This document shows, piece by piece, positions 21,884 to 45,717 of a DNA stretch of 64,000 nt. Made by a program: the position numbers and the translations under genes. The DNA lies in IMG/VR virus record IMGVR_UViG_3300035181_000357, positions 146,612-210,611 of that record, one strand, 5' to 3'. Below the pieces are notes generated by a model. It searched no databases and was not told where the DNA came from. It saw nothing but the letters and a program-made list of their open reading frames with translations. Within the stretch, counting starts at the first letter, position 1; the number at the start of each line of letters is the position of its first letter.

Positions 21884-22897
21884 ATGCATGAATATGCGAT
21901 CGTCATCGGAAGATTTCAACCCTTCCATCTGGCCCACAAGCAACTGCTCGAGAAAGCGTTCGAGGTTGCGAGTAGGGTCATAATTATTTTAGGTAGCCAT
22001 GCAGCTGCCCAAACTTCCAAGAATCCCTGGACTAGTCAAGAACGAATCAAGATGATCGAGTCGGCTCTGACACAAGAGCAGAGTGATCGCATTACATTCC
22101 TTCCAGTCCGCGACTATCTTTACAATGAGAATGTCTGGTTGTCTGAAATTCAGCAGAAGGTTAAGGTGGTCACCAACAACTCCAAATCGGTCGTGTTGAT
22201 TGGTCACATGAAGGATGAGTCAAGCAGTTATCTCAAGACTTTCCCTCAGTGGGAATTCATTGAGACCAAGGCCGCTTTTGATCTGTCTGCTACTGATATT
22301 CGCCATTCTCTGTTCACCACTGAAGGATGGGCTGACTCAGCTCAAAAAGTTCCTCAGAAGGTGCAAAACTATCTGGTCAACTGGTGCCGAACTTCGGACT
22401 ATGTTCGCCTGAAGGAAGAGTACACCTACCTCCAGAAGTATAAGGCTTCTTGGGCTGTGGCTCCTTATCCTGTGACCTTCGTGACTGCTGACGCTGTCGT
22501 GATCAAGTCTGGTCACGTCCTAGTGGTCAAGCGTGGTGGAAATCCTGGCAAGGGCTTGATCGCTCTCCCTGGTGGATTCGTAAATCAGAATGAAAGCCTT
22601 GATGTGGCTTGCCTTCGAGAGCTCAAGGAAGAGACCAAGATAAAGGTCAGCATGGATAAGCTGACCTCTGCTCGTCAAACCAACCACGTGTTCGACCACC
22701 CACAGCGTAGTCTCCGTGGTCGTACTATCACTTATGCCTACCTGTTCGACTTGGGTAAAGAGGGAGACCTCCCAACCGTCAAGGGTTCAGATGATGCCGA
22801 GACTGCTTTCTGGATGCCTATTGGAGATGTATATTCCAATGAGGCTACCTTCTTCGAAGATCATCGCGACATCATTCTCTATTTCCTCGGCCGATAG
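21884..22897 (+). CDS. nadM: Bifunctional NMN adenylyltransferase / Nudix ADP-ribose hydrolase
   Basis: GRFQPFHLAH, KNPWT, SATDIR, PGGFV...RELKEET Nudix box, GSDDA, FFEDH. Confidence 0.93.
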   Translation: MHEYAIVIGRFQPFHLAHKQLLEKAFEVASRVIIILGSHAAAQTSKNPWTSQERIKMIESALTQEQSDRITFLPVRDYLYNENVWLSEIQQKVKVVTNNSKSVVLIGHMKDESSSYLKTFPQWEFIETKAAFDLSATDIRHSLFTTEGWADSAQKVPQKVQNYLVNWCRTSDYVRLKEEYTYLQKYKASWAVAPYPVTFVTADAVVIKSGHVLVVKRGGNPGKGLIALPGGFVNQNESLDVACLRELKEETKIKVSMDKLTSARQTNHVFDHPQRSLRGRTITYAYLFDLGKEGDLPTVKGSDDAETAFWMPIGDVYSNEATFFEDHRDIILYFLGR

Positions 22898-22903
22898 GCT
22901 ACC

Positions 22904-23215
22904 ATGAATTCTCACAAACCTACTCCAACCATTTCCTACAAGGACAACTGGTACCATCACGAATACTATGTCGATGGGAAACAACTCAAGGACATTAGAC
23001 GAGTTGAGATCGGAAAAGAATTAAAGTCATTCGTAGTTCCTGTCAACTCGTTCAAGGATGCTGTGACCTATAACGATATGGGTCATGAATATACGTCATA
23101 TTCAACTCAGTTTACCGTGACCATGCGCGACGAGATGCTTCTGATTCCAAACGAAATCCCTCTATCACGTCTTCTCAGTCTTGGCTTCTTCGTCAAACTC
23201 GTTGATGGTGAATAA
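22904..23215 (+). CDS. Hypothetical protein
   Basis: 103 aa; in frame with the nadM TAG stop. Confidence 0.65.
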   Translation: MNSHKPTPTISYKDNWYHHEYYVDGKQLKDIRRVEIGKELKSFVVPVNSFKDAVTYNDMGHEYTSYSTQFTVTMRDEMLLIPNEIPLSRLLSLGFFVKLVDGE

Positions 23216-23237
23216 ACTTTCCTAAAGGAGAAATACC

Positions 23238-24650
23238 ATGTATAATTATAACTTGATACTAGATTCGGATAGTTACAAAATGTCTCACTGGGTACAATAC
23301 CCACATGGAGATAACTTCAAGACCACTTCCATGTTCTCCTATCTGGAGAGTCGTGGTGGTAAATATGATTTCACCCTTTGGTTCGGACTCCAGTATCTCT
23401 TGAAAGAATACTTGTCCCAGCCCATCACGATGGAGATGGTCGAAGAAGCCAAGGAGATCACTGAACTCCACGGTACTCCCTTCAATTATGATGGTTGGAA
23501 GTACATTGTCGAGAAGCTTGGTGGTCGTATTCCTGTTCGTATCCGTGCCGTCCCTGAAGGAACTAAGGTTCCTATCCACAATATCCTGATGTCCGTCGAA
23601 TCCACTGATGGGAATGTGCCATGGATCGCCAGCCATGTGGAAACCATGCTTATGCGTTGTTGGTATCCTACTACTGTAGCCACTCAATCCAAGACCATCA
23701 AGGATCTTATCCTCAGCTATCTCACAAAGACATCAGAAGATCCTCAAGATGAGATCGCTTTCAAGCTTCACGACTTCGGTAGCCGTGGTGTCAGCTCCTT
23801 TGAATCTGCTGGCTGGGGTGGTGCTGCCCATCTGGTAAACTTCATGGGAACTGATACGATTGCTGGTCTTCTCCTAGCTCGTAAGTTCTATCATGAACCT
23901 ATGGCTGGTTACTCTATCCCTGCTGCCGAGCACAGTACTATCACTAGCTGGGGTCGTGAGAACGAAGTCCAAGCATATCGTAACATGCTCAAGCAGTATG
24001 CTAAGCCTGGTGCATTACTGGCTGTGGTCTCTGATTCCTACGATATCTACAACGCTTGTGAGAATCTCTGGGGTGGAGAGCTTCGCCAGGAAGTCATTAA
24101 CTCCGGCGCTACCGTGGTTATCCGCCCTGACTCTGGTCATCCTGCTACTGTGGTTCTCAAGTGCCTCGAGCTTCTCGGTTCAAAATTCGGCTACACCATT
24201 AATTCTAAGAACTACCGCGTACTCAATAACGTTCGTGTTATCCAGGGTGACGGTGTGAATTACGACTCCATCCTGGAGATCTTGGAAGTTGCCACTCAAC
24301 ATGGTTGGTCTGCCACCAACATCGCCTTTGGTATGGGTGGTGCTCTTCTTCAAATCGTCAACCGTGATACTCAGCAGTTCGCCTATAAGTGCAGCAGCAT
24401 GACTCGTACCTACACTGATGGGCACGAAGAGCAGATTGATGTCTACAAGCAGCCTAAGACCGACTCTATGAAGAACTCTAAGCGTGGTCGGCTGGATCTG
24501 ATCTTGACTGAGACTGGGTATCACACTGTCAAACTCCTTCTTGGTGAACAGGCCCATCCTGCCTCTGCAATGCAGACCGTCTATGAAAATGGTGAGATCC
24601 TGGTTGATGACACCTTTGATATTATTCGTGAGAGGTCCAACCATGTCTAG
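23238..24650 (+). CDS. nadV: Nicotinamide phosphoribosyltransferase (NAMPT)
   Basis: DSYKMSH, LHDFGSRG, AAEHS, VVSDSYD, VIRPDSG, IQGDG, FGMGGALLQ. Confidence 0.95.
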   Translation: MYNYNLILDSDSYKMSHWVQYPHGDNFKTTSMFSYLESRGGKYDFTLWFGLQYLLKEYLSQPITMEMVEEAKEITELHGTPFNYDGWKYIVEKLGGRIPVRIRAVPEGTKVPIHNILMSVESTDGNVPWIASHVETMLMRCWYPTTVATQSKTIKDLILSYLTKTSEDPQDEIAFKLHDFGSRGVSSFESAGWGGAAHLVNFMGTDTIAGLLLARKFYHEPMAGYSIPAAEHSTITSWGRENEVQAYRNMLKQYAKPGALLAVVSDSYDIYNACENLWGGELRQEVINSGATVVIRPDSGHPATVVLKCLELLGSKFGYTINSKNYRVLNNVRVIQGDGVNYDSILEILEVATQHGWSATNIAFGMGGALLQIVNRDTQQFAYKCSSMTRTYTDGHEEQIDVYKQPKTDSMKNSKRGRLDLILTETGYHTVKLLLGEQAHPASAMQTVYENGEILVDDTFDIIRERSNHV

Positions 24651-26302: not shown

Positions 26303-27823
26303 ATGAGATTCATAAACGAATACACCCAGAAATCAGCTAATACCCCAGAGATCAAGGTCTTCACTGATAAGAGCACATATCACAAGCTAGCGAAAGTAGC
26401 TTTGACTGGTGTACTAAACGGTCAGTACTACAAATCTGAGGACAAGATAGTCAGTGAACTAACTTCTGTAGTTGAGAAGATGGCAATCGAAGATCCTATC
26501 TTCTTGCTAAAGGCAGCTAAGGCTAGCCGTGCCCTCAACATGAAGTTGTTCCCTAAGCTAGCTGTCGCTGCTGTCCTATCGAAGTCACAGGACAAGTCTG
26601 TAGATCCAGAGATCGAAAAGATTCTGGCTACCTACAACCCAAACCAGCTTTTAGAGTTCATCTTGATGTTGAAGAACCGTCAGTATGGTTCTGGCCTGGG
26701 GTCTAGATCACAGAAGCTCGTCGCTCGTGGACTAGCTCGTGTCTCAGCTAAGCGTCTAGAGGATTGGACTCTGTCCGAAGGTTCTAGCCTTAACAGAATC
26801 CTACGTCTCGTTCACCCAACACTTAATCCAGTCGTCAAGTACGTCCTGAAGGCTGATAAGGAAGCAGAGTGGACTGATCGTCAGCGTGCACTCGAGACCA
26901 TCAAGATGCTTCAGCAGAAGAGAGAAGGGGATTACGAGGCTGAGGTAGCAGCATTAATCAAAGTCTACAATCTTCCATTCAATTCTTTGAAGGGTGTAAT
27001 CTCAGCTACCAACAAAGCTGCCTGGGACGAGATCGCAGAGAACATGTCTGTGATCCAGCTCCTAATCAACCTCAAGTCCCTTGACAATATGGGTGTGATG
27101 ACCACTTCTAGACTTCGTCGTCTTCTAGATGCCAAGTTTGTAAAGGGCAAGACCAGGATTCTTCCTTTTGACATCATGCGGCCAATGGCTAATGCAGATG
27201 CTAAGTACAGGGATGTCTTGATCGAGTTCTTGGAGAAGCTAGTCCTAGATCCTATTCCATCCCTTGAGGGTAAGACCGTCGGTCTAATCTTTGACGGTAG
27301 TGGATCAATGGGTGGTCCTAACTATGCTGGTAGCCCATGGATGACTTCTATGGCCTTGGGTCTGCCTCTTATGTCCAGCTGTAATGTAGCTGAGTCCATC
27401 ATCTATTCTACCACTGTCCGAAAGGCTCCAGAGTTCAGAAAGTATGATGGTGCAGAGAACTTCAAGCGTATCTCCGAGGCATTCCCATCTGGTGGAACCA
27501 ACACCGATATGGCGATTGACCACTTCACCAAGAACAACATCGTTGTTGATGTTCTTGTTCTCATCACTGATGAGCAGCAGAACGGCTACAGGTGTGGTGG
27601 ATTCCAGAACGCCTGGGCAAGATACAGAAAGCTTCACCCAGAAGCAGAACTACTTATCGTAAACGCTACTCCATATGAGTGGCACATGACAGAGACTGGA
27701 ACCAATGGTGTCACCATCGTCCAGACTCTGACCCCAGCTGTTTACCAGATGATCCAGTACCAGGGTCAGGATATGGTAGACGTCATTTCCAACATGGAAC
27801 TAGGAGACAGCAATGAAGATTAA
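26303..27823 (+). CDS. TROVE/Ro60-family RNA-binding protein with vWA domain
   Basis: Helical TROVE region (DPIFLLK, GLGSRSQK, LRLVHP) plus MIDAS DGSGSM, GGTNT, ITDEQ. Confidence 0.85.
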   Translation: MRFINEYTQKSANTPEIKVFTDKSTYHKLAKVALTGVLNGQYYKSEDKIVSELTSVVEKMAIEDPIFLLKAAKASRALNMKLFPKLAVAAVLSKSQDKSVDPEIEKILATYNPNQLLEFILMLKNRQYGSGLGSRSQKLVARGLARVSAKRLEDWTLSEGSSLNRILRLVHPTLNPVVKYVLKADKEAEWTDRQRALETIKMLQQKREGDYEAEVAALIKVYNLPFNSLKGVISATNKAAWDEIAENMSVIQLLINLKSLDNMGVMTTSRLRRLLDAKFVKGKTRILPFDIMRPMANADAKYRDVLIEFLEKLVLDPIPSLEGKTVGLIFDGSGSMGGPNYAGSPWMTSMALGLPLMSSCNVAESIIYSTTVRKAPEFRKYDGAENFKRISEAFPSGGTNTDMAIDHFTKNNIVVDVLVLITDEQQNGYRCGGFQNAWARYRKLHPEAELLIVNATPYEWHMTETGTNGVTIVQTLTPAVYQMIQYQGQDMVDVISNMELGDSNED

Positions 27824-35614: not shown

Positions 35615-35617
35615 GAA

Positions 35618-35647
35618 TTGTCTGATTTACGAATTATTAAGTAACCT
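35618..35647 (+). promoter_or_regulatory. Early-type promoter ahead of the tRNA array
   Basis: TTGTCT-N18-TAACCT. Confidence 0.65.
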
Positions 35648-35985
35648 AATAATGCCCGACGAAGTTTGCCCTGAAACCAAGTTAGAAATTTCTTGTTCAG
35701 AGCCTGGTTGGTTGGGTAATAAGTGAAGTGAAGCGGCTGAGGCCACCCTGCTCTCTGAAAAATCAATAACTTAATGGTATCGAACGCATCCGAGATTCAG
35801 GTCTCCGATGCTGAGATGAAACCACTACCTTTCCTGAATCTTAGAAATAAGGCTGTCGTGAGACTGCCTGTTTCCGTATGATTGCAGGAGGTTCCAACAA
35901 AATGTGGTCGCAGTTTATGGATGAAACTGCAGATATCTAGTATATGCCTGGTTCTCGATGATCCTATAAAATCGAAAACGAATTT

Positions 35986-36101
35986 GATCCCATAGCTCAG
36001 TTGGACAGAGCAACAGCCTTATCGCACTCCTGACCAGGTGGGTTTGGAACTGCATGGCTCTAAGCTGTAGGTCGCTGGTTCGAGCCCAGCTGGGATCACC
36101 A
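35986..36101 (+). tRNA. tRNA (probably Arg-UCU) with 39-nt insert in anticodon loop
   Basis: All four stems and CCA intact; removing 36021-36059 gives loop CT-TCT-AA; A20 present. Confidence 0.8.
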
Positions 36102-36589
36102 AATTGGTTTCTGGATAGTGTGGCAATGCTGATACTGTTGGTTAGACCTGATACCAACAAAATACCGCTTCTAAGTAGTTGTAGCGGGTAGTCGGATAAC
36201 TACTAGACTCCGACATGTTAACGCTGTTGAAGAGTCCATAACACTTGGTAGCATTACCTAAGTGGCGCGGAGTTTGGACACTGTTAGCTAAACCGCCTAA
36301 TGCTAACAAATACATCTTGGGGAATACTCTCCAGTTCATAATGAAAGATGGTAGTAGGATAGAAACGGGCTAACTCCTACATGTTAACGCTGTTGAGTCT
36401 ATCTTGGTGGGCATCGCTCCCACCAAGATAGACTGTTTTACCTCCTGTCTGAATCGCCCTGATCTCGTGGTACCTGAACTTTATGTCCATCTATATCCTG
36501 CAAATGAACTGTAGACATGGCTACCATCAGGGTTTCGAGACTCAGATCATAGGTATAGAATACTGTATTCAGTGGAGTACCACGATCCT
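36102..36589 (+). ncRNA. Structured non-coding block A (tandem motif, long hairpins)
   Basis: No credible ORF; many helices, including a perfect 15-bp hairpin at 36396-36432. Confidence 0.55.
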
Positions 36590-36664: not shown

Positions 36665-37030
36665 TCCGAGGTGGGTTAAGCGTCACTGTGATGGCAGTAC
36701 GGATACCCACAGCATAAACTGCATGATGCTGGTCTTTACCTCCCGATAGTAGAATCTCGAAAGAGACTACTATTATACCCGACAAACCATTCCACTACTG
36801 ACATAGTGGAAACATAAATCGGAGCCGTGTCAGCGGTAATGCGGAACATGAACTATTTGTTGCGATAGTCGTGAGTTCGCCGGGAGTTATTAAATCCCCA
36901 TGTGATGGCTCGTATTAGAGCGAAGGATGCGTAAGCACCCAACAGGCTGAAGATAACACAGCGTATCATATGTTTTTGTTTTAGGAGAGCCCTGTCAGAA
37001 CTCTTCGGAGGAGGGTTAGACTCCCTATTA
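36665..37030 (+). ncRNA. Structured non-coding block B
   Basis: Helices capped by GAAA, GTAA and TTCG tetraloops. Confidence 0.6.
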
Positions 37031-37032
37031 AT

Positions 37033-37108
37033 AGCCCTATAGCTCAGCGGTCAGAGCTGACGGCTCATAACCGTCTGGTCCTAGGTTCGAACCCTAGTGG
37101 GGCTACCA
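37033..37108 (+). tRNA. tRNA(CAU), Ile2/Met elongator type
   Basis: GACGG-CTCATAA-CCGTC, CCA. Confidence 0.9.
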
Positions 37109-37109
37109 A

Positions 37110-37568
37110 ATCGTTTACTAGTTCGATTCTAATAAAAACTAGTCGAGGGGGATGGGTGAAGAATGCTGGTCTCAGGATAGAGACTATTCCCATCGGGTGA
37201 GACCTTATCCAATCTCTTCCTGCAGGAGCCGCGTAAAAAAGTCAAAAGAACCTTGGTGCTACACTATGCGCGAGTTATTGATAAAATCAATAGCGTCTCC
37301 TTTATGGATAGCGGTAGGAATTCGCTGCAAAATCCAAGGCTACCCTACTTAGGCATGCGGTAGGGTAAATTTCTCGAAATCTCAGGTTTCGTTGAACTAC
37401 GAAGTAACTGTACCGTAGTGAGGAATCTGTGACAGCGACATGGGTCGGGCCATGGCTGGCGACACCAGCTAAAAAGATGTTCCTGTGGGAAGGGTAACGT
37501 ATACTTTCTTCAGAAGACGTGCCAGTCCGGCTGGTGTCCAGCATGTATCTACCTCTACTGGACTTAAA
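37110..37568 (+). ncRNA. Structured non-coding block C
   Basis: Dense helices and alternative pairings, no credible ORF. Confidence 0.55.
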
Positions 37569-37653
37569 GCTCCCATGGCGGAATTGGTAGACGCTACGGA
37601 CTTAAAATCCGTCGCCTATGGGCATCCCGGTTCGACTCCGGGTGGGAGCACCA
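37569..37653 (+). tRNA. tRNA-Leu(UAA)
   Basis: Class II cloverleaf, CCA. Confidence 0.95.
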
Positions 37654-37832
37654 AACTGTTCTCTGTTACAGTCTTAACAGAGTGGTCCAGGCGGGGAAAT
37701 TCCCCATCCGTAGTCCCTATGCTACAGAAGGTCATAGGGTGGTGGAGGCGGTGTGACCTCGGTCATGCTTCTAGGTGTCGGGTGCGTAAGCAACATGACT
37801 CGAGTCAGATCCTCTAAGTCTGACATATTTCT

Positions 37833-38170
37833 GGGCCTGACAAGGTTTCGACAGGTTGTTAGCTTGGGATTGCGGTGCAGGGACTGGTTGATCAGCAGGC
37901 CAGTATAAAAGCAGATCAAACTTTAATTGCCGAGCCACAGCTCGCACTAGCAGCTTAAACACTGCTACGAGGAACCGCGAGAGGACAGTAGCGGGGAATC
38001 GTCACCACCGTCCTAGTTTCTACTAAGAGTTCGGGTAAGTAGGAGCGAAACTACGCGATCAAACGATAGTAGGCTGTCAGTCGCCGACCTATCGAGACCA
38101 GACTGACTAACCCTGTGAATGACTTCAATACAACTCTTCTTGGACGTGGGTTCGAATCCCACCAGGTCCA
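37833..38170 (+). ncRNA. ssrA: tmRNA, tag AEPQLALAA
   Basis: GGGCCTG..GGTTTCGAC 5' end, T arm, G3.U70 pair, tag ORF 37929-37958; CCA not encoded. Confidence 0.93.
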
Positions 38171-38676
38171 CATCGGTAGACTTCCTAGTTCTTACGGAGA
38201 ATAGGAACATGGAAGTCTACCATACAACCCTCTAAGATAATGGATGGACAAGAGGTAGGAAATTCCCTAGCGATAGGGATTAAGATCGGCGAGTGCCGAT
38301 ATACGGAGGTAGTTATGGCTACTGAACCAGAGGACAACGACGGTCTACTCGGGACCGAGCGTGAATCAGATGAAGAAGGTTGTCCAGATTATGACAAGGA
38401 CGACGACGAGTAACACTGTACCATAATACCGGGGATGGGGACGACAGGCCCATACAAAGCAGATCCATAGTGTAAAAACTATGGGTGATGAAAGTCTGCC
38501 ATGTCAGTTGATTCTCTAGACTGACAAACCTTAAGTTGGATGCAAACGGAAGACGACTCGCCATCGACCCCAGGCACATGGGGAACCACGGCCTTTCCCA
38601 GATAGCGTAGTGGCCCTACGACGATGCGTGGAAGGTGGGATTATTCCCTTAAAAGCACTGTGTCATCCAACTACTT
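38171..38676 (+). ncRNA. Structured non-coding block E
   Basis: Many helices, including long-range GTTGGATG/CATCCAAC. Confidence 0.55.
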
Positions 38677-38756: not shown

Positions 38757-38843
38757 GCCGAGGTGCCAGAGTGATTGAATGGGCAGGTTTTGTAATCCTG
38801 TAGAGAAATCTCGTCATGGGTTTGAATCCCATCCTCGGCTCCA
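38757..38843 (+). tRNA. tRNA-Thr(UGU) with long variable arm
   Basis: Loop TT-TGT-AA, G1-C72/C2-G71, U73, V-arm GAG-AAAT-CTC. Confidence 0.75.
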
Positions 38844-40493: not shown

Positions 40494-40579
40494 GGTCCAG
40501 GAGTCCAACGGTTGAGACAGCACGCTGTTAACGTGCCGCTGTAAAAGCACATAGGGTTCAACTCCCTACTGGATCGCCA
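40494..40579 (+). tRNA. tRNA-Asn(GUU) with long variable arm
   Basis: GCACG-CTGTTAA-CGTGC, V-arm GCT-GTAAA-AGC, G73. Confidence 0.85.
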
Positions 40580-40799: not shown

Positions 40800-40891
40800 C
40801 CCGGTGTGATGTACGGTTGCATAGGTGGCTTTATACCCCACTCGCGCCAGATTAGCGCCTTGTTAGGGTTCGACTCCCTACGCCGGGACCA
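40800..40891 (+). tRNA. Atypical class II tRNA, anticodon ambiguous (UUA possible)
   Basis: Acceptor, D, V and T arms and CCA present; anticodon arm GGTGG-CTTTATACC-CCACT. Confidence 0.6.
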
Positions 40892-41755: not shown

Positions 41756-41841
41756 GCATCGGACGCAGAACTGGTTGCTGCCCCAGACTCTTAATCTGGT
41801 TCCTAACGGACTTGGGGGTTCGAATCCCCTCCGATGCACCA
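41756..41841 (+). tRNA. tRNA-Lys(CUU) with long variable arm
   Basis: CCAGA-CTCTTAA-TCTGG, V-arm TCC-TAAC-GGA, A73. Confidence 0.85.
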
Positions 41842-45641: not shown

Positions 45642-45717
45642 GGTTCCGAAGCTCAATGGTAGAGCAAGGAGTCTCTAAAACTTCTGGCTGTGGATTCGAA
45701 TTCCACCGGAATCACCA
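45642..45717 (+). tRNA. Amber suppressor tRNA (CUA)
   Basis: AGGAGT-CTCTAAA-ACTTCT, normal D and T loops, A73-CCA. Confidence 0.88.

What the first reader, a model, noticed from the sequence alone, without database searches (positions are those of the whole stretch)
37110..37568. ~450-nt structured block with mutually exclusive pairings
Seen: GGTCTC (37168-37173) can pair locally with GAGAC (37180-37184) inside the GATGGG/CCCATC stem, or with GAGACC (37199-37204) together with GGATA/TATCC, giving a pseudoknot or switch. Further helices: CCTTGG/CCAAGG, TATTGAT/ATCAATA, TACCCTAC/GTAGGGTA, CATGG/CCATG, GCTGG/CCAGC, AGTCCGG/CTGGACT.
Basis: partly seen in the sequence, partly recalled or inferred. 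Interest (0 to 1): 0.62.

Follow-up and report, generated by a model that had tools for sequence, protein, structure and literature searches.

The report
New structured RNA in phage tRNA array
The 460-base gap between two tRNA genes of an uncultured large phage holds a conserved, heavily folded noncoding RNA that matches no described RNA family; its position recalls the large RNAs of unknown function found beside phage tRNA clusters.

Summary
The block is real, and it is exactly the spacer (37109-37568, + strand) between tRNA-Met(CAU) and tRNA-Leu(UAA). It lies in an array of about 43 tRNAs plus a tmRNA, in a 210-kb uncultured phage record. It folds better than shuffles on the tRNA strand only (z -3.2 to -4.0, against -1.5 to -1.9 on the other strand). 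Two diverged relatives carry it in the same place, directly upstream of tRNA-Leu(UAA). One has the whole 460 nt at about 65% identity; the other has only the 3' 190 nt. The helices are kept through compensatory changes: 30 of 81 pairs in one alignment and 18 of 48 in the other, against 4 or fewer in slid controls. Column-shuffle z is -6.1 and -5.1. No reading frame is conserved. No Rfam family matches, even at E<=10, and there is no second copy and no hit in any collection searched. The last is replaced by a covarying neighbour. A loop-to-tail pseudoknot has modest covariation support, and a switch is not shown. I read it as a new two-domain noncoding RNA, probably released by tRNA processing. 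Its function is unknown and there is no expression evidence. By context its nearest analogues are GOLLD and ROOL and the T4 RNAs rnaC and rnaD.

The parts
37033..37108 (+). tRNA-Met(CAU) with encoded CCA; forms the 5' boundary of the element
   Evidence: Rfam tRNA 65.7 bits; ARAGORN
37109..37568 (+). The whole element: a conserved structured noncoding RNA of about 460 nt
   Evidence: MFE z -3.2 and -4.0 on + only. Homologous over its full length to L004 12985-13427. 30 of 81 pairs carry double changes. No conserved ORF. No Rfam match.
37109..37374 (+). 5' domain (P1-P5 plus pseudoknot). Present in the window and L004, absent from L006.
   Evidence: Alignment A5. Model R2 finds only the window and L004.
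37375..37568 (+). 3' domain (P6-P12). Present in all three lineages, always just upstream of tRNA-Leu(UAA).
   Evidence: Alignment A3. Model R1 scores 194-220 bits in the window, L004 and L006 only. 18 of 48 pairs carry double changes.
37111..37149 (+). P1 hairpin (core ACUAGU 37117-22 / ACUAGU 37138-43)
   Evidence: L004 has GUUGGU/ACCAAC: 3-4 compensatory pairs. The X6 variants 37129 and 37131 lie in its loop.
37151..37194 (+). P2 (GAUGGG/CCCAUC) enclosing the hairpin P2a (GUCUC 37169-73 / GAGAC 37180-84)
   Evidence: L004 has AUGAGG/CCUCAU, so P2 is kept with changed pairs. P2a is kept as GUCU/AGAC without variation.
37175..37210 (+). Candidate pseudoknot: P2a loop GGAUA 37175-79 pairs with UAUCC 37206-10
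   Evidence: L004 has UGAUU/AAUCA, which is two double changes. Inference from one comparison.
37168..37204 (+). Alternative pairing GGUCUC 37168-73 / GAGACC 37199-204; it excludes P2a and crosses P2
   Evidence: The GGUC/GACC core is kept in L004. The 'double changes' reported for it come from a one-column misregister of the alignment.
37251..37339 (+). P3 (CCUUGG-UGC / GCA-AAAU-CCAAGG) enclosing P4 (CUAU 37264-67 / GUAG 37314-17) and a variable hairpin at 37276-37292
   Evidence: P3 has 3 double changes and P4 has 2. The variable hairpin is deleted or replaced in L004 and carries the X6 indels.
37341..37367 (+). P5 hairpin (UACCCUAC/GUAGGGUA) with the conserved loop block UAGGCAUG
   Evidence: The loop block is identical in L004 and the stem is kept with changes.
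37383..37429 (+). P6 (CAGGUUUC/GGAAUCUG) enclosing P7 (CUACG/CGUAG) with the conserved loop AGUAACUG
   Evidence: P6 has 3 double changes and P7 has 2-4. The X6 change 37424 A>G turns U-A into U-G.
37439..37469 (+). Abutting twin hairpins P8 (CAUGG/CCAUG, loop GUCGGG) and P9 (GCUGG/CCAGC, loop CGACA)
   Evidence: P8 has 4 of 5 pairs compensated and P9 has 3 of 5. Both loops are invariant in all three lineages. That the loops GUCG and CGAC are complementary is read from the sequence.
37487..37509 (+). P10 hairpin (GGGAA/UUUCU)
   Evidence: The relatives have CGAAG/CUUCG, which is 2 double changes. The X6 change 37489 G>A turns G-U into A-U.
37522..37563 (+). P11 (CCAG/CUGG, invariant) and P12 (GUCCAG 37536-41 / CUGGAC 37558-63)
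Evidence: P12 is CCUGAG/CUCAGG in L004 and L006, so 4 of 6 pairs are compensated when aligned in register.
37569..37653 (+). tRNA-Leu(UAA). Its 5' end, the expected RNase P site, is the 3' boundary of the element.
   Evidence: The same tRNA follows the element in L004 (13505-13589) and L006 (12330-12414).

Best explanation
The spacer encodes a previously undescribed structured noncoding RNA of about 460 nt. It is read from the same strand as the surrounding tRNAs and is most likely part of the tRNA polycistron. It has no promoter or terminator of its own. It abuts a CCA-ending tRNA-Met 2 nt upstream and tRNA-Leu(UAA) 5 nt downstream. Ordinary tRNA maturation would therefore cut it out as a discrete molecule: 3' trimming of tRNA-Met at one end, RNase P at position 37568/37569 at the other.

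It folds into two domains. The 3' domain of about 190 nt (P6-P12) has invariant loop sequences and is found in every lineage. The 5' domain of about 270 nt (P1-P5 with a probable loop-to-tail pseudoknot) is found in two of three lineages.

Shown here: the conservation, the strand, the helices, and the absence of coding. Inferred: co-transcription, excision, and action as a stand-alone RNA. Function is not established. My best guess is a trans-acting scaffold or partner-binding RNA of the phage's translation and RNA-repair island (TROVE/Ro60-like protein, kinase, NUDIX, RNA ligase, tRNAs, tmRNA). That would be analogous to the large RNAs that sit next to tRNA islands in other phages.
For: Position and strand:
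- It sits inside a + strand array of about 43 tRNAs plus a tmRNA.
- A P-loop kinase, a NUDIX protein and an RNA ligase lie directly upstream.
- A TROVE/Ro60-type protein is encoded at 26303-27823.

Folding in the single sequence:
- Significant on + only.

Homologues at the syntenic place, before tRNA-Leu(UAA):
- Found in L004 and in L006/L007, whose RNA ligases are only 63-67% identical to the window's.
- The other long spacers of the array (36099-36589, 36665-37032, most of 38174-38676) cannot be aligned between these phages.

Conserved structure:
- RNAalifold finds 30 of 81 and 18 of 48 pairs with compensatory double changes.
- Column-shuffle z is -6.1 and -5.1, with 0 shuffles as good.
- Slid-partner controls give 4 or fewer double changes, and 0 of 500 shuffles reach the observed values.
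- Many G-U pairs exist only on the + strand.

A ~96% variant in a freshwater run (X6):
- Of 9 substitutions, 7 fall on unpaired positions and 2 keep their pair.
- Of 5 indels, 4 are in linkers and 1 is in the variable hairpin.

Not coding:
- Stops occur in all six frames of every homologue, and tblastx similarity is spread over several frames.
- The X6 single-base deletions would break any frame.

Other:
- No promoter-like or terminator-like site lies inside it.
- It is single-copy in the 210-kb record.
Against: There is no RNA-level evidence. The one metatranscriptome that holds a relative (X9) has contigs over the tmRNA, the spacer before it and part of the spacer at 36665-37032, but none over 37120-37543. 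Contigs show presence, not absence, but this does not favour a very abundant stable RNA.

Only three diverged lineages are known, and only two for the 5' domain. The structures were predicted from the same alignments on which pairs were counted, which inflates those counts.

Excision by tRNA-processing enzymes is inferred from position only. In L004 about 78 extra nt separate the element from tRNA-Leu.

Function is unknown.
Confidence: 0.6

Rival explanations
1. Cis-acting precursor element. The folded spacer is not a product in its own right. It is a processing or folding platform of the polycistronic tRNA transcript, for instance one that guides or times maturation of the adjacent tRNA-Leu(UAA) or shields the precursor from nucleases, and it is degraded afterwards.
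For: The 3' domain is linked to tRNA-Leu(UAA) in all three lineages. It has no promoter or terminator of its own. The RNA run X9 has no contig over it although neighbouring parts are present.
Against: Fifteen or so helices and many invariant loop sequences over 460 nt are far more than known tRNA leaders need. Most tRNAs of the same array are 2-130 nt apart with no such element. L005, a relative with tRNA-Leu(UAA), lacks it. In L004 it is separated from the tRNA by about 78 nt.
Confidence: 0.2
2. Self-assembling large RNA of the GOLLD/ROOL kind. The excised RNA multimerises through its invariant loops into a higher-order particle.
For: GOLLD and ROOL are phage RNAs often found near tRNA islands. 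[quoted passage not shown] This element has the same context and the same 3'-conserved, 5'-variable layout. The invariant loops GUCGGG and CGACA are complementary, and the P5 loop is near-palindromic.
Against: There is no match to either Rfam model, even at E<=10 on a 468-nt search. It is shorter, at 460 nt against more than 800 for many GOLLD members and roughly 580 for ROOL (the ROOL figure is from my own knowledge). Loop complementarity of 4 nt is weak evidence. Nothing about assembly can be computed here.
Confidence: 0.1
3. Conformational switch or riboswitch. GGUCUC alternates between the local partner GAGAC and the distal partner GAGACC in response to a ligand, Mg2+ or transcription kinetics.
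For: Both partners are present in the window, and their cores (AGAC, GACC) are kept in L004.
Against: There is no informative covariation for either alternative. The covarying loop-to-tail pairing fits only the local hairpin. No expression platform, terminator or downstream coding gene exists. No riboswitch family matches.
Confidence: 0.05
4. No function. The structure is a by-product: decayed tRNA genes, a remnant of a mobile element, or small unannotated protein genes.
For: tRNA arrays gain and lose genes. The array differs between relatives. ORFs of 66 aa (+) and 80 aa (-) exist in the window, and a gene caller called the 80-aa one in L008.
Against: The pairs are kept through about 35% sequence divergence with 30 or more double changes. 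No tRNA-like match appears in the interval. The ORFs are not conserved and are frameshifted in X6. There are no repeats or second copies.
Confidence: 0.05

Closest known systems
GOLLD RNA (large ornate RNA of phages and prophages)
   Same: It is phage-encoded and lies beside or inside a tRNA island. One studied member lies downstream of a tRNA-Met. It is large and multi-helix, with a conserved 3' region and a variable 5' region, and its function is unknown.
   Different: There is no detectable sequence or structure match to the Rfam model. This element is about half the size. Quaternary assembly is untested.
ROOL RNA
   Same: It is a phage or prophage RNA, often near tRNA islands. It has a complex fold with pseudoknots and no known protein partner.
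   Different: No Rfam match. The helix layout is different, and this element is known from only a narrow phage clade.
Phage T4 stable RNAs rnaC (species 1) and rnaD (species 2)
   Same: They are noncoding RNAs encoded inside a phage tRNA cluster, on the tRNA strand and directly abutting a tRNA. A GIY-YIG homing endonuclease sits in the T4 cluster, and one splits the RNA ligase gene beside the cluster in L006 (T4 record). Their function is unknown. That they are made from the tRNA precursor is my own knowledge of the T4 literature.
   Different: The T4 RNAs are 139 and 119 nt, against about 460 nt here. Models R1 and R2 score below 9 bits on the T4 cluster.
Bacterial and phage Y RNAs (YrlA) that partner Ro60/TROVE proteins
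   Same: The phage encodes a TROVE/Ro60-type protein in the same RNA-repair neighbourhood. Y RNAs are structured RNAs linked to tRNA biology (PMC4201824).
   Different: Y RNAs are 80-130 nt and carry a GNCGAAN0-1G motif in the Ro-binding stem. This element is 460 nt and has no conserved copy of that motif. It has no YrlA match, and the TROVE gene lies about 9.3 kb away.

Membership tests
GOLLD RNA | Matches the family covariance model (Rfam) | tested here: not met
   No hit at gathering score on the whole window. None at E<=10 on 3.1 kb or on the 468-nt interval. None at E<=5 in the homologous loci L004, L005 and L006.
GOLLD RNA | Encoded in a phage or prophage near a tRNA island | tested here: met
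   It lies between two tRNAs of an array of about 43 tRNAs in a viral record. The feature is as described in the paper read.
GOLLD RNA | Conserved 3' region and less conserved 5' region; many members exceed 800 nt | tested here: inconclusive
   The domain pattern is analogous: the 3' domain is in 3 of 3 lineages and the 5' domain in 2 of 3. The length is only 460 nt.
GOLLD / ROOL | Forms RNA-only multimeric cages | not testable with these tools
   Needs native gels or cryo-EM of the transcript.
ROOL RNA | Matches the family covariance model (Rfam) | tested here: not met
   no hit.
Y RNA / YrlA | 80-130 nt, with a long terminal stem carrying the Ro-binding motif GNCGAAN0-1G (PMC4201824) | tested here: not met
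   The element is 460 nt. No copy of the motif is conserved between the window and L004 (sequences). No YrlA hit.
Y RNA / YrlA | Encoded next to a Ro60/TROVE gene | tested here: inconclusive
   A TROVE/Ro60-type protein is encoded at 26303-27823, but that is about 9.3 kb upstream with many genes between.
T4-type stable RNAs of tRNA clusters (rnaC, rnaD) | Noncoding gene inside the phage tRNA cluster, on the tRNA strand, abutting a tRNA | tested here: met
   for the window; T4 annotation.
T4-type stable RNAs of tRNA clusters (rnaC, rnaD) | Sequence or structure homology to rnaC or rnaD | tested here: not met
   R1 and R2 with filters off on the T4 cluster: best scores 8.6 and 7.0 bits.
T4-type stable RNAs of tRNA clusters (rnaC, rnaD) | Accumulates as a stable processed RNA | tested here: inconclusive
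   The only RNA run holding a relative has no contig over 37120-37543, though it covers the tmRNA and neighbouring spacers. Contigs cannot show absence.
Riboswitch / cis-regulatory leader | Aptamer plus expression platform upstream of a regulated coding gene | tested here: not met
   The downstream gene is a tRNA. There is no terminator-like or promoter-like site in the interval and no riboswitch family hit.
Group I intron | Interrupts a host gene and matches a group I core model | tested here: not met
   Both flanking tRNAs are complete. No Intron_gpI hit at E<=10. An apparent R-element-like GAGACUA has no conserved partner in L004.

The most novel reading that the evidence does not exclude
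This is the founding member of a third class of large 'ornate' phage RNAs that live in tRNA islands, alongside GOLLD and ROOL. It would be cut out of the tRNA precursor by RNase P and 3' trimming. Through its invariant, mutually complementary loops it would either build a higher-order RNA particle or dock the phage's own RNA-repair proteins (TROVE/Ro60-like protein, RNA ligase, kinase) onto tRNAs during the fight with host anticodon nucleases.
Probability: 0.12. Interest if true: 0.8.

Novelty: new variant of a known kind. Interest (0 to 1): 0.55.

Why it matters
Large structured RNAs of unknown function are rare in bacteria and phages. The two phage classes that sit by tRNA islands, GOLLD and ROOL, were recently found to form RNA-only cages, and their role is still open. 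An unrelated 460-nt RNA in the same genomic niche would show that tRNA islands of large phages recurrently host big folded RNAs. This one is framed by two tRNAs and sits next to a tRNA-repair and ribosome-rescue gene set. Its modest size and modular build would make it a tractable object for structure and function work. The value is limited by the narrow known distribution (three lineages) and the lack of expression data.

Tried and rejected
Searches that found nothing:
- Phage isolate genomes. Megablast and blastn of the element and of 4.1 kb around it matched only tRNAs. The closest isolates by RNA ligase are 44% identical cyanophages and others.
- Exact and gapped pattern scans. A tRNA-Met 3' end pattern gave nothing in viral contigs. 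The 3'-domain pattern gave nothing in viral contigs, three chance hits without tRNAs or similarity in metagenome contigs, and nothing in 185,579 prokaryote genomes. A looser 17-base pattern gave 54 viral hits, as expected by chance, and all failed model R1. A 22-mer from the spacer before the tmRNA gave nothing in viral or prokaryote contigs.
- Distant relatives. Eighty viral loci with RNA ligases 42-49% identical, plus L002, L003 and L146, have no match to R1 or R2.
- Paralogy. The other long spacers of the array are not paralogues.

Readings rejected:
- Coding.
- Y RNA.
- Group I intron, RNase P RNA or another known ribozyme. No Rfam hit, and the apparent motifs are not conserved in L004.
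- T4 rnaC or rnaD homology.

Other notes:
- Expression: the RNA run X9 gave no contig over the element.
- MAFFT Q-INS-i and X-INS-i were not installed, so the pseudoknot region was aligned by eye.
- The complex-prediction and structure-prediction tools were not used, since no protein-protein claim is made.

Full report
**Where the finding lies.** The window is the last 64 kb of a 210,611-bp IMG/VR virus record that CheckV rates 69% complete. Rfam and ARAGORN find about 43 tRNA genes and a tmRNA (37833-38173), all on the + strand, between 35986 and 49039. The finding (37110-37568) is exactly the spacer between tRNA-Met(CAU) 37033-37108 and tRNA-Leu(UAA) 37569-37653. Directly upstream of the array lie a P-loop kinase, a NUDIX protein and an RNA ligase with an OB domain. 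Further upstream, at 26303-27823, is a TROVE/Ro60-type protein. Its Pfam and PDB sequence hits are weak. An atlas search gives feature score 0.98 and structure TM 0.70 to TROVE clusters. No cultured phage resembles the region; only the tRNAs match, and the nearest RNA ligases of isolates are 44% identical.

**Checking the observation.** The interval folds better than dinucleotide shuffles on the + strand (z -3.15 with 0 of 100 shuffles as good; z -3.96). It does much less well on the - strand (z -1.9 and -1.5). The other long spacers at the head of the array (35615-35985, 36099-36589, 36665-37032, 38174-38676) also fold well, but equally on both strands. That points to DNA-level palindromes such as the 16-bp stem at 36396-36434. 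Only the finding shows the strand asymmetry expected of an RNA with G-U pairs.

**Finding relatives.** Direct DNA searches gave nothing. I therefore searched with the neighbouring RNA ligase and fetched the contigs of its closest relatives:
- L008 is a 100% identical copy from a JGI metagenome and may be the same population.
- L004 (a Logan assembly; ligase 67% identical) has the order tRNA-Lys(UUU), 544 nt, tRNA-Leu(UAA), 604 nt, tmRNA.
- L006 and L007 (ligase 63% identical, split by a GIY-YIG gene) have tRNA-Arg(UCU), 192 nt, tRNA-Leu(UAA).

The window's spacer aligns with L004 12985-13427 over its whole length at roughly 65% identity, with blocks of identity. Its last 190 nt align with the whole L006 spacer. 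The other long spacers cannot be aligned between these phages. The element therefore has a 3' domain (37375-37568) present in all three lineages and always upstream of tRNA-Leu(UAA). Its 5' domain (37109-37374) is present in two.

**Conserved structure.** RNAalifold on window plus L004 predicts 81 pairs, 30 of them kept through changes on both sides. On the three 3' domains it predicts 48 pairs, 18 of them compensated. Column-shuffled alignments give z -6.1 and -5.1, and none reaches the observed energy. With the count of structure pairs, 100% and 93.7% of cells are paired. No shuffle of 500 reaches the observed covariation, and sliding the partners by 1-3 columns leaves at most 4 double changes. 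These counts lean towards a structure derived from the same alignments, but the margin is large. Examples:
- CAUGG/CCAUG becomes GUGAG/CUCAC.
- GCUGG/CCAGC becomes CUGGG/CCCAG.
- CCUUGG/CCAAGG becomes UCCAGA/UCUGGG.
- ACUAGU/ACUAGU becomes GUUGGU/ACCAAC.

**A closer variant.** Laying contigs of public runs shows a variant about 96% identical in a freshwater metagenome, X6. Seven of its nine substitutions fall on unpaired positions, and the other two change U-A to U-G and G-U to A-U. Four of five indels are in linkers, and the fifth is in a hairpin that L004 lacks.

**Not coding.** All six frames carry stops in each homologue, and tblastx similarity is spread over frames. The indels between homologues are not multiples of three. 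The single-base deletions in X6 would break the 66-aa + strand ORF.

Nine of the ten helices are supported. The exception is AGTCCGG/CTGGACT. In the relatives the covarying helix is GUCCAG 37536-41 / CUGGAC 37558-63, against CCUGAG/CUCAGG.

In the 37151-37210 region, P2 (GAUGGG/CCCAUC) is kept as AUGAGG/CCUCAU. The local hairpin GUCUC/GAGAC is kept as GUCU/AGAC. The hairpin loop GGAUA and the downstream UAUCC change together to UGAUU/AAUCA. That supports a loop-to-tail pseudoknot, though from one comparison only. In a blind scan of the alignment, helices of 5 bp or more with two double changes outside the consensus were rare but not absent (1 of 10).

The distal pairing GGUCUC/GAGACC keeps its GGUC/GACC core in L004, but nothing there varies informatively. 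The 'double changes' listed for it come from a one-column misalignment. That pairing and GGAUA/UAUCC cannot stack into one helix, because both strands run in the same order. A switch is possible but unsupported.

**What it is not.** No Rfam family matches: not at gathering score, not at E<=10 in 3.1 kb or in the 468-nt interval alone (best hit 12 bits), and not at E<=5 in L004, L005 and L006. That excludes detectable membership of GOLLD, ROOL, YrlA, RNase P, group I introns, riboswitches and the known self-cleaving ribozymes.

Covariance models of the two domains (R1, R2) find only the known copies. They were searched against:
- the window and the whole 210-kb record;
- 80 viral loci with more distant RNA ligases;
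- 54 pattern-matched viral loci;
- the T4 tRNA cluster.

Pattern scans of metagenome contigs and of 185,579 prokaryote genomes found no real match. Near-identical copies occur in sediment and microbial-mat runs, and variants about 96% identical in freshwater and wastewater runs.

**How it probably works.** Shown: a conserved two-domain fold on the tRNA strand, framed by tRNAs at 2 nt and 5 nt, with no promoter-like or terminator-like site inside. The only promoter-like site nearby is at 35626-35653, at the head of the array. Inferred: it is transcribed within the tRNA polycistron and released by tRNA maturation, with RNase P making its 3' end at 37568/37569. This is how the T4 stable RNAs rnaC and rnaD are made, according to my own knowledge of the T4 literature. 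Those RNAs are annotated directly next to tRNA-Arg in the T4 tRNA cluster.

The many invariant loops point to tertiary, intermolecular or protein contacts. They include UAGGCAUG, AGUAACUG, and the abutting hairpins with the complementary loops GUCGGG and CGACA. The context and the conserved-3', variable-5' layout parallel GOLLD, which like ROOL sits near phage tRNA islands and forms RNA cages. This is a resemblance, not membership.

The Y-RNA idea was raised by the TROVE gene. It fails on length and on the GNCGAAN0-1G motif (sequences).

The main weakness is expression. The one RNA run with a relative has contigs over the tmRNA, the spacer before it and part of the 36665-37032 spacer, but none over 37120-37543. 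Contigs cannot prove absence. Still, this keeps alive the rival reading that the element is a short-lived cis-acting part of the precursor.

**Verdict.** This is a real, conserved structured noncoding RNA element that belongs to no described family. So far it is confined to a small clade of uncultured large phages. Its function is unknown and its expression is not yet shown. It is a new variant of a known kind, namely large RNAs embedded in phage tRNA clusters. Interest is moderate (0.55).

Noticed in passing
window 35986-36098 (insert 36021-36059); L005 5412-5524: The window's tRNA-Arg(UCU) carries a 39-nt insert in the anticodon loop. The L006, L004 and L005 copies lack it, and the two tRNA halves are 100% identical to L006. 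In L005 the tRNA-Lys(UUU) carries a 40-nt insert at the anticodon, with shared motifs (TCGC..TCCT, TGGAAC). These are far too short for group I introns. They sit next to a kinase and RNA ligase gene set that could in principle rejoin cut tRNAs.
   Followed up: partly
window 35615-35985: The spacer right after the RNA ligase gene is also a conserved noncoding block. It is about 77-79% identical to L004 and L006, with long invariant runs and non-triplet indels. It has no + strand ORF of 50 aa or more and no Rfam hit. A structure is predicted, but there is too little variation to test it.
   Followed up: partly
window 37732-37765: A 34-nt stretch upstream of the tmRNA is 100% identical in L004, although the two phages are about 30% diverged elsewhere. 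It overlaps a weak wcaG RNA match (22 bits against a gathering score of 42). It was not found in viral or prokaryote collections.
   Followed up: partly
window 26303-27823: The phage encodes a TROVE/Ro60-type vWA protein, conserved in L004 and L006 upstream of a metallophosphatase, kinase, NUDIX and RNA ligase. Its expected Y-RNA partner was not found by Rfam.
   Followed up: partly
window 45642-45717: There is a tRNA with anticodon CUA, an amber suppressor that ARAGORN labels Pyl. I did not check whether the phage reads TAG as a codon.
   Followed up: no
L006 8739-10747; L007 1304-3312: In these relatives the RNA ligase gene is split into an OB-domain ORF and a ligase-domain ORF by a GIY-YIG homing-endonuclease gene.
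   Followed up: no
window 36099-36589, 36665-37032, 38174-38676: Three other long spacers fold very well on both strands (z -3.7 to -4.7), including a 16-bp perfect hairpin at 36396-36434. They are not conserved in the relatives. In X6 and X9 an 80-nt piece (36699-36778) is replaced by 18 nt.
   Followed up: partly
window 38757-38843, 40494-40579, 40800-40891, 41756-41841: Several tRNAs that are normally about 76 nt are oversized: Thr 87, Asn 86, Ile(UAU) 92 and Lys(CUU) 86 nt. tRNA-Thr is equally long in L004 and L005.
   Followed up: no
window 21884-24650 and 46611-47279: There are NAD salvage genes (an NMN adenylyltransferase-NUDIX fusion and a nicotinamide phosphoribosyltransferase), and a pentapeptide-repeat protein is encoded inside the tRNA array.
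   Followed up: no
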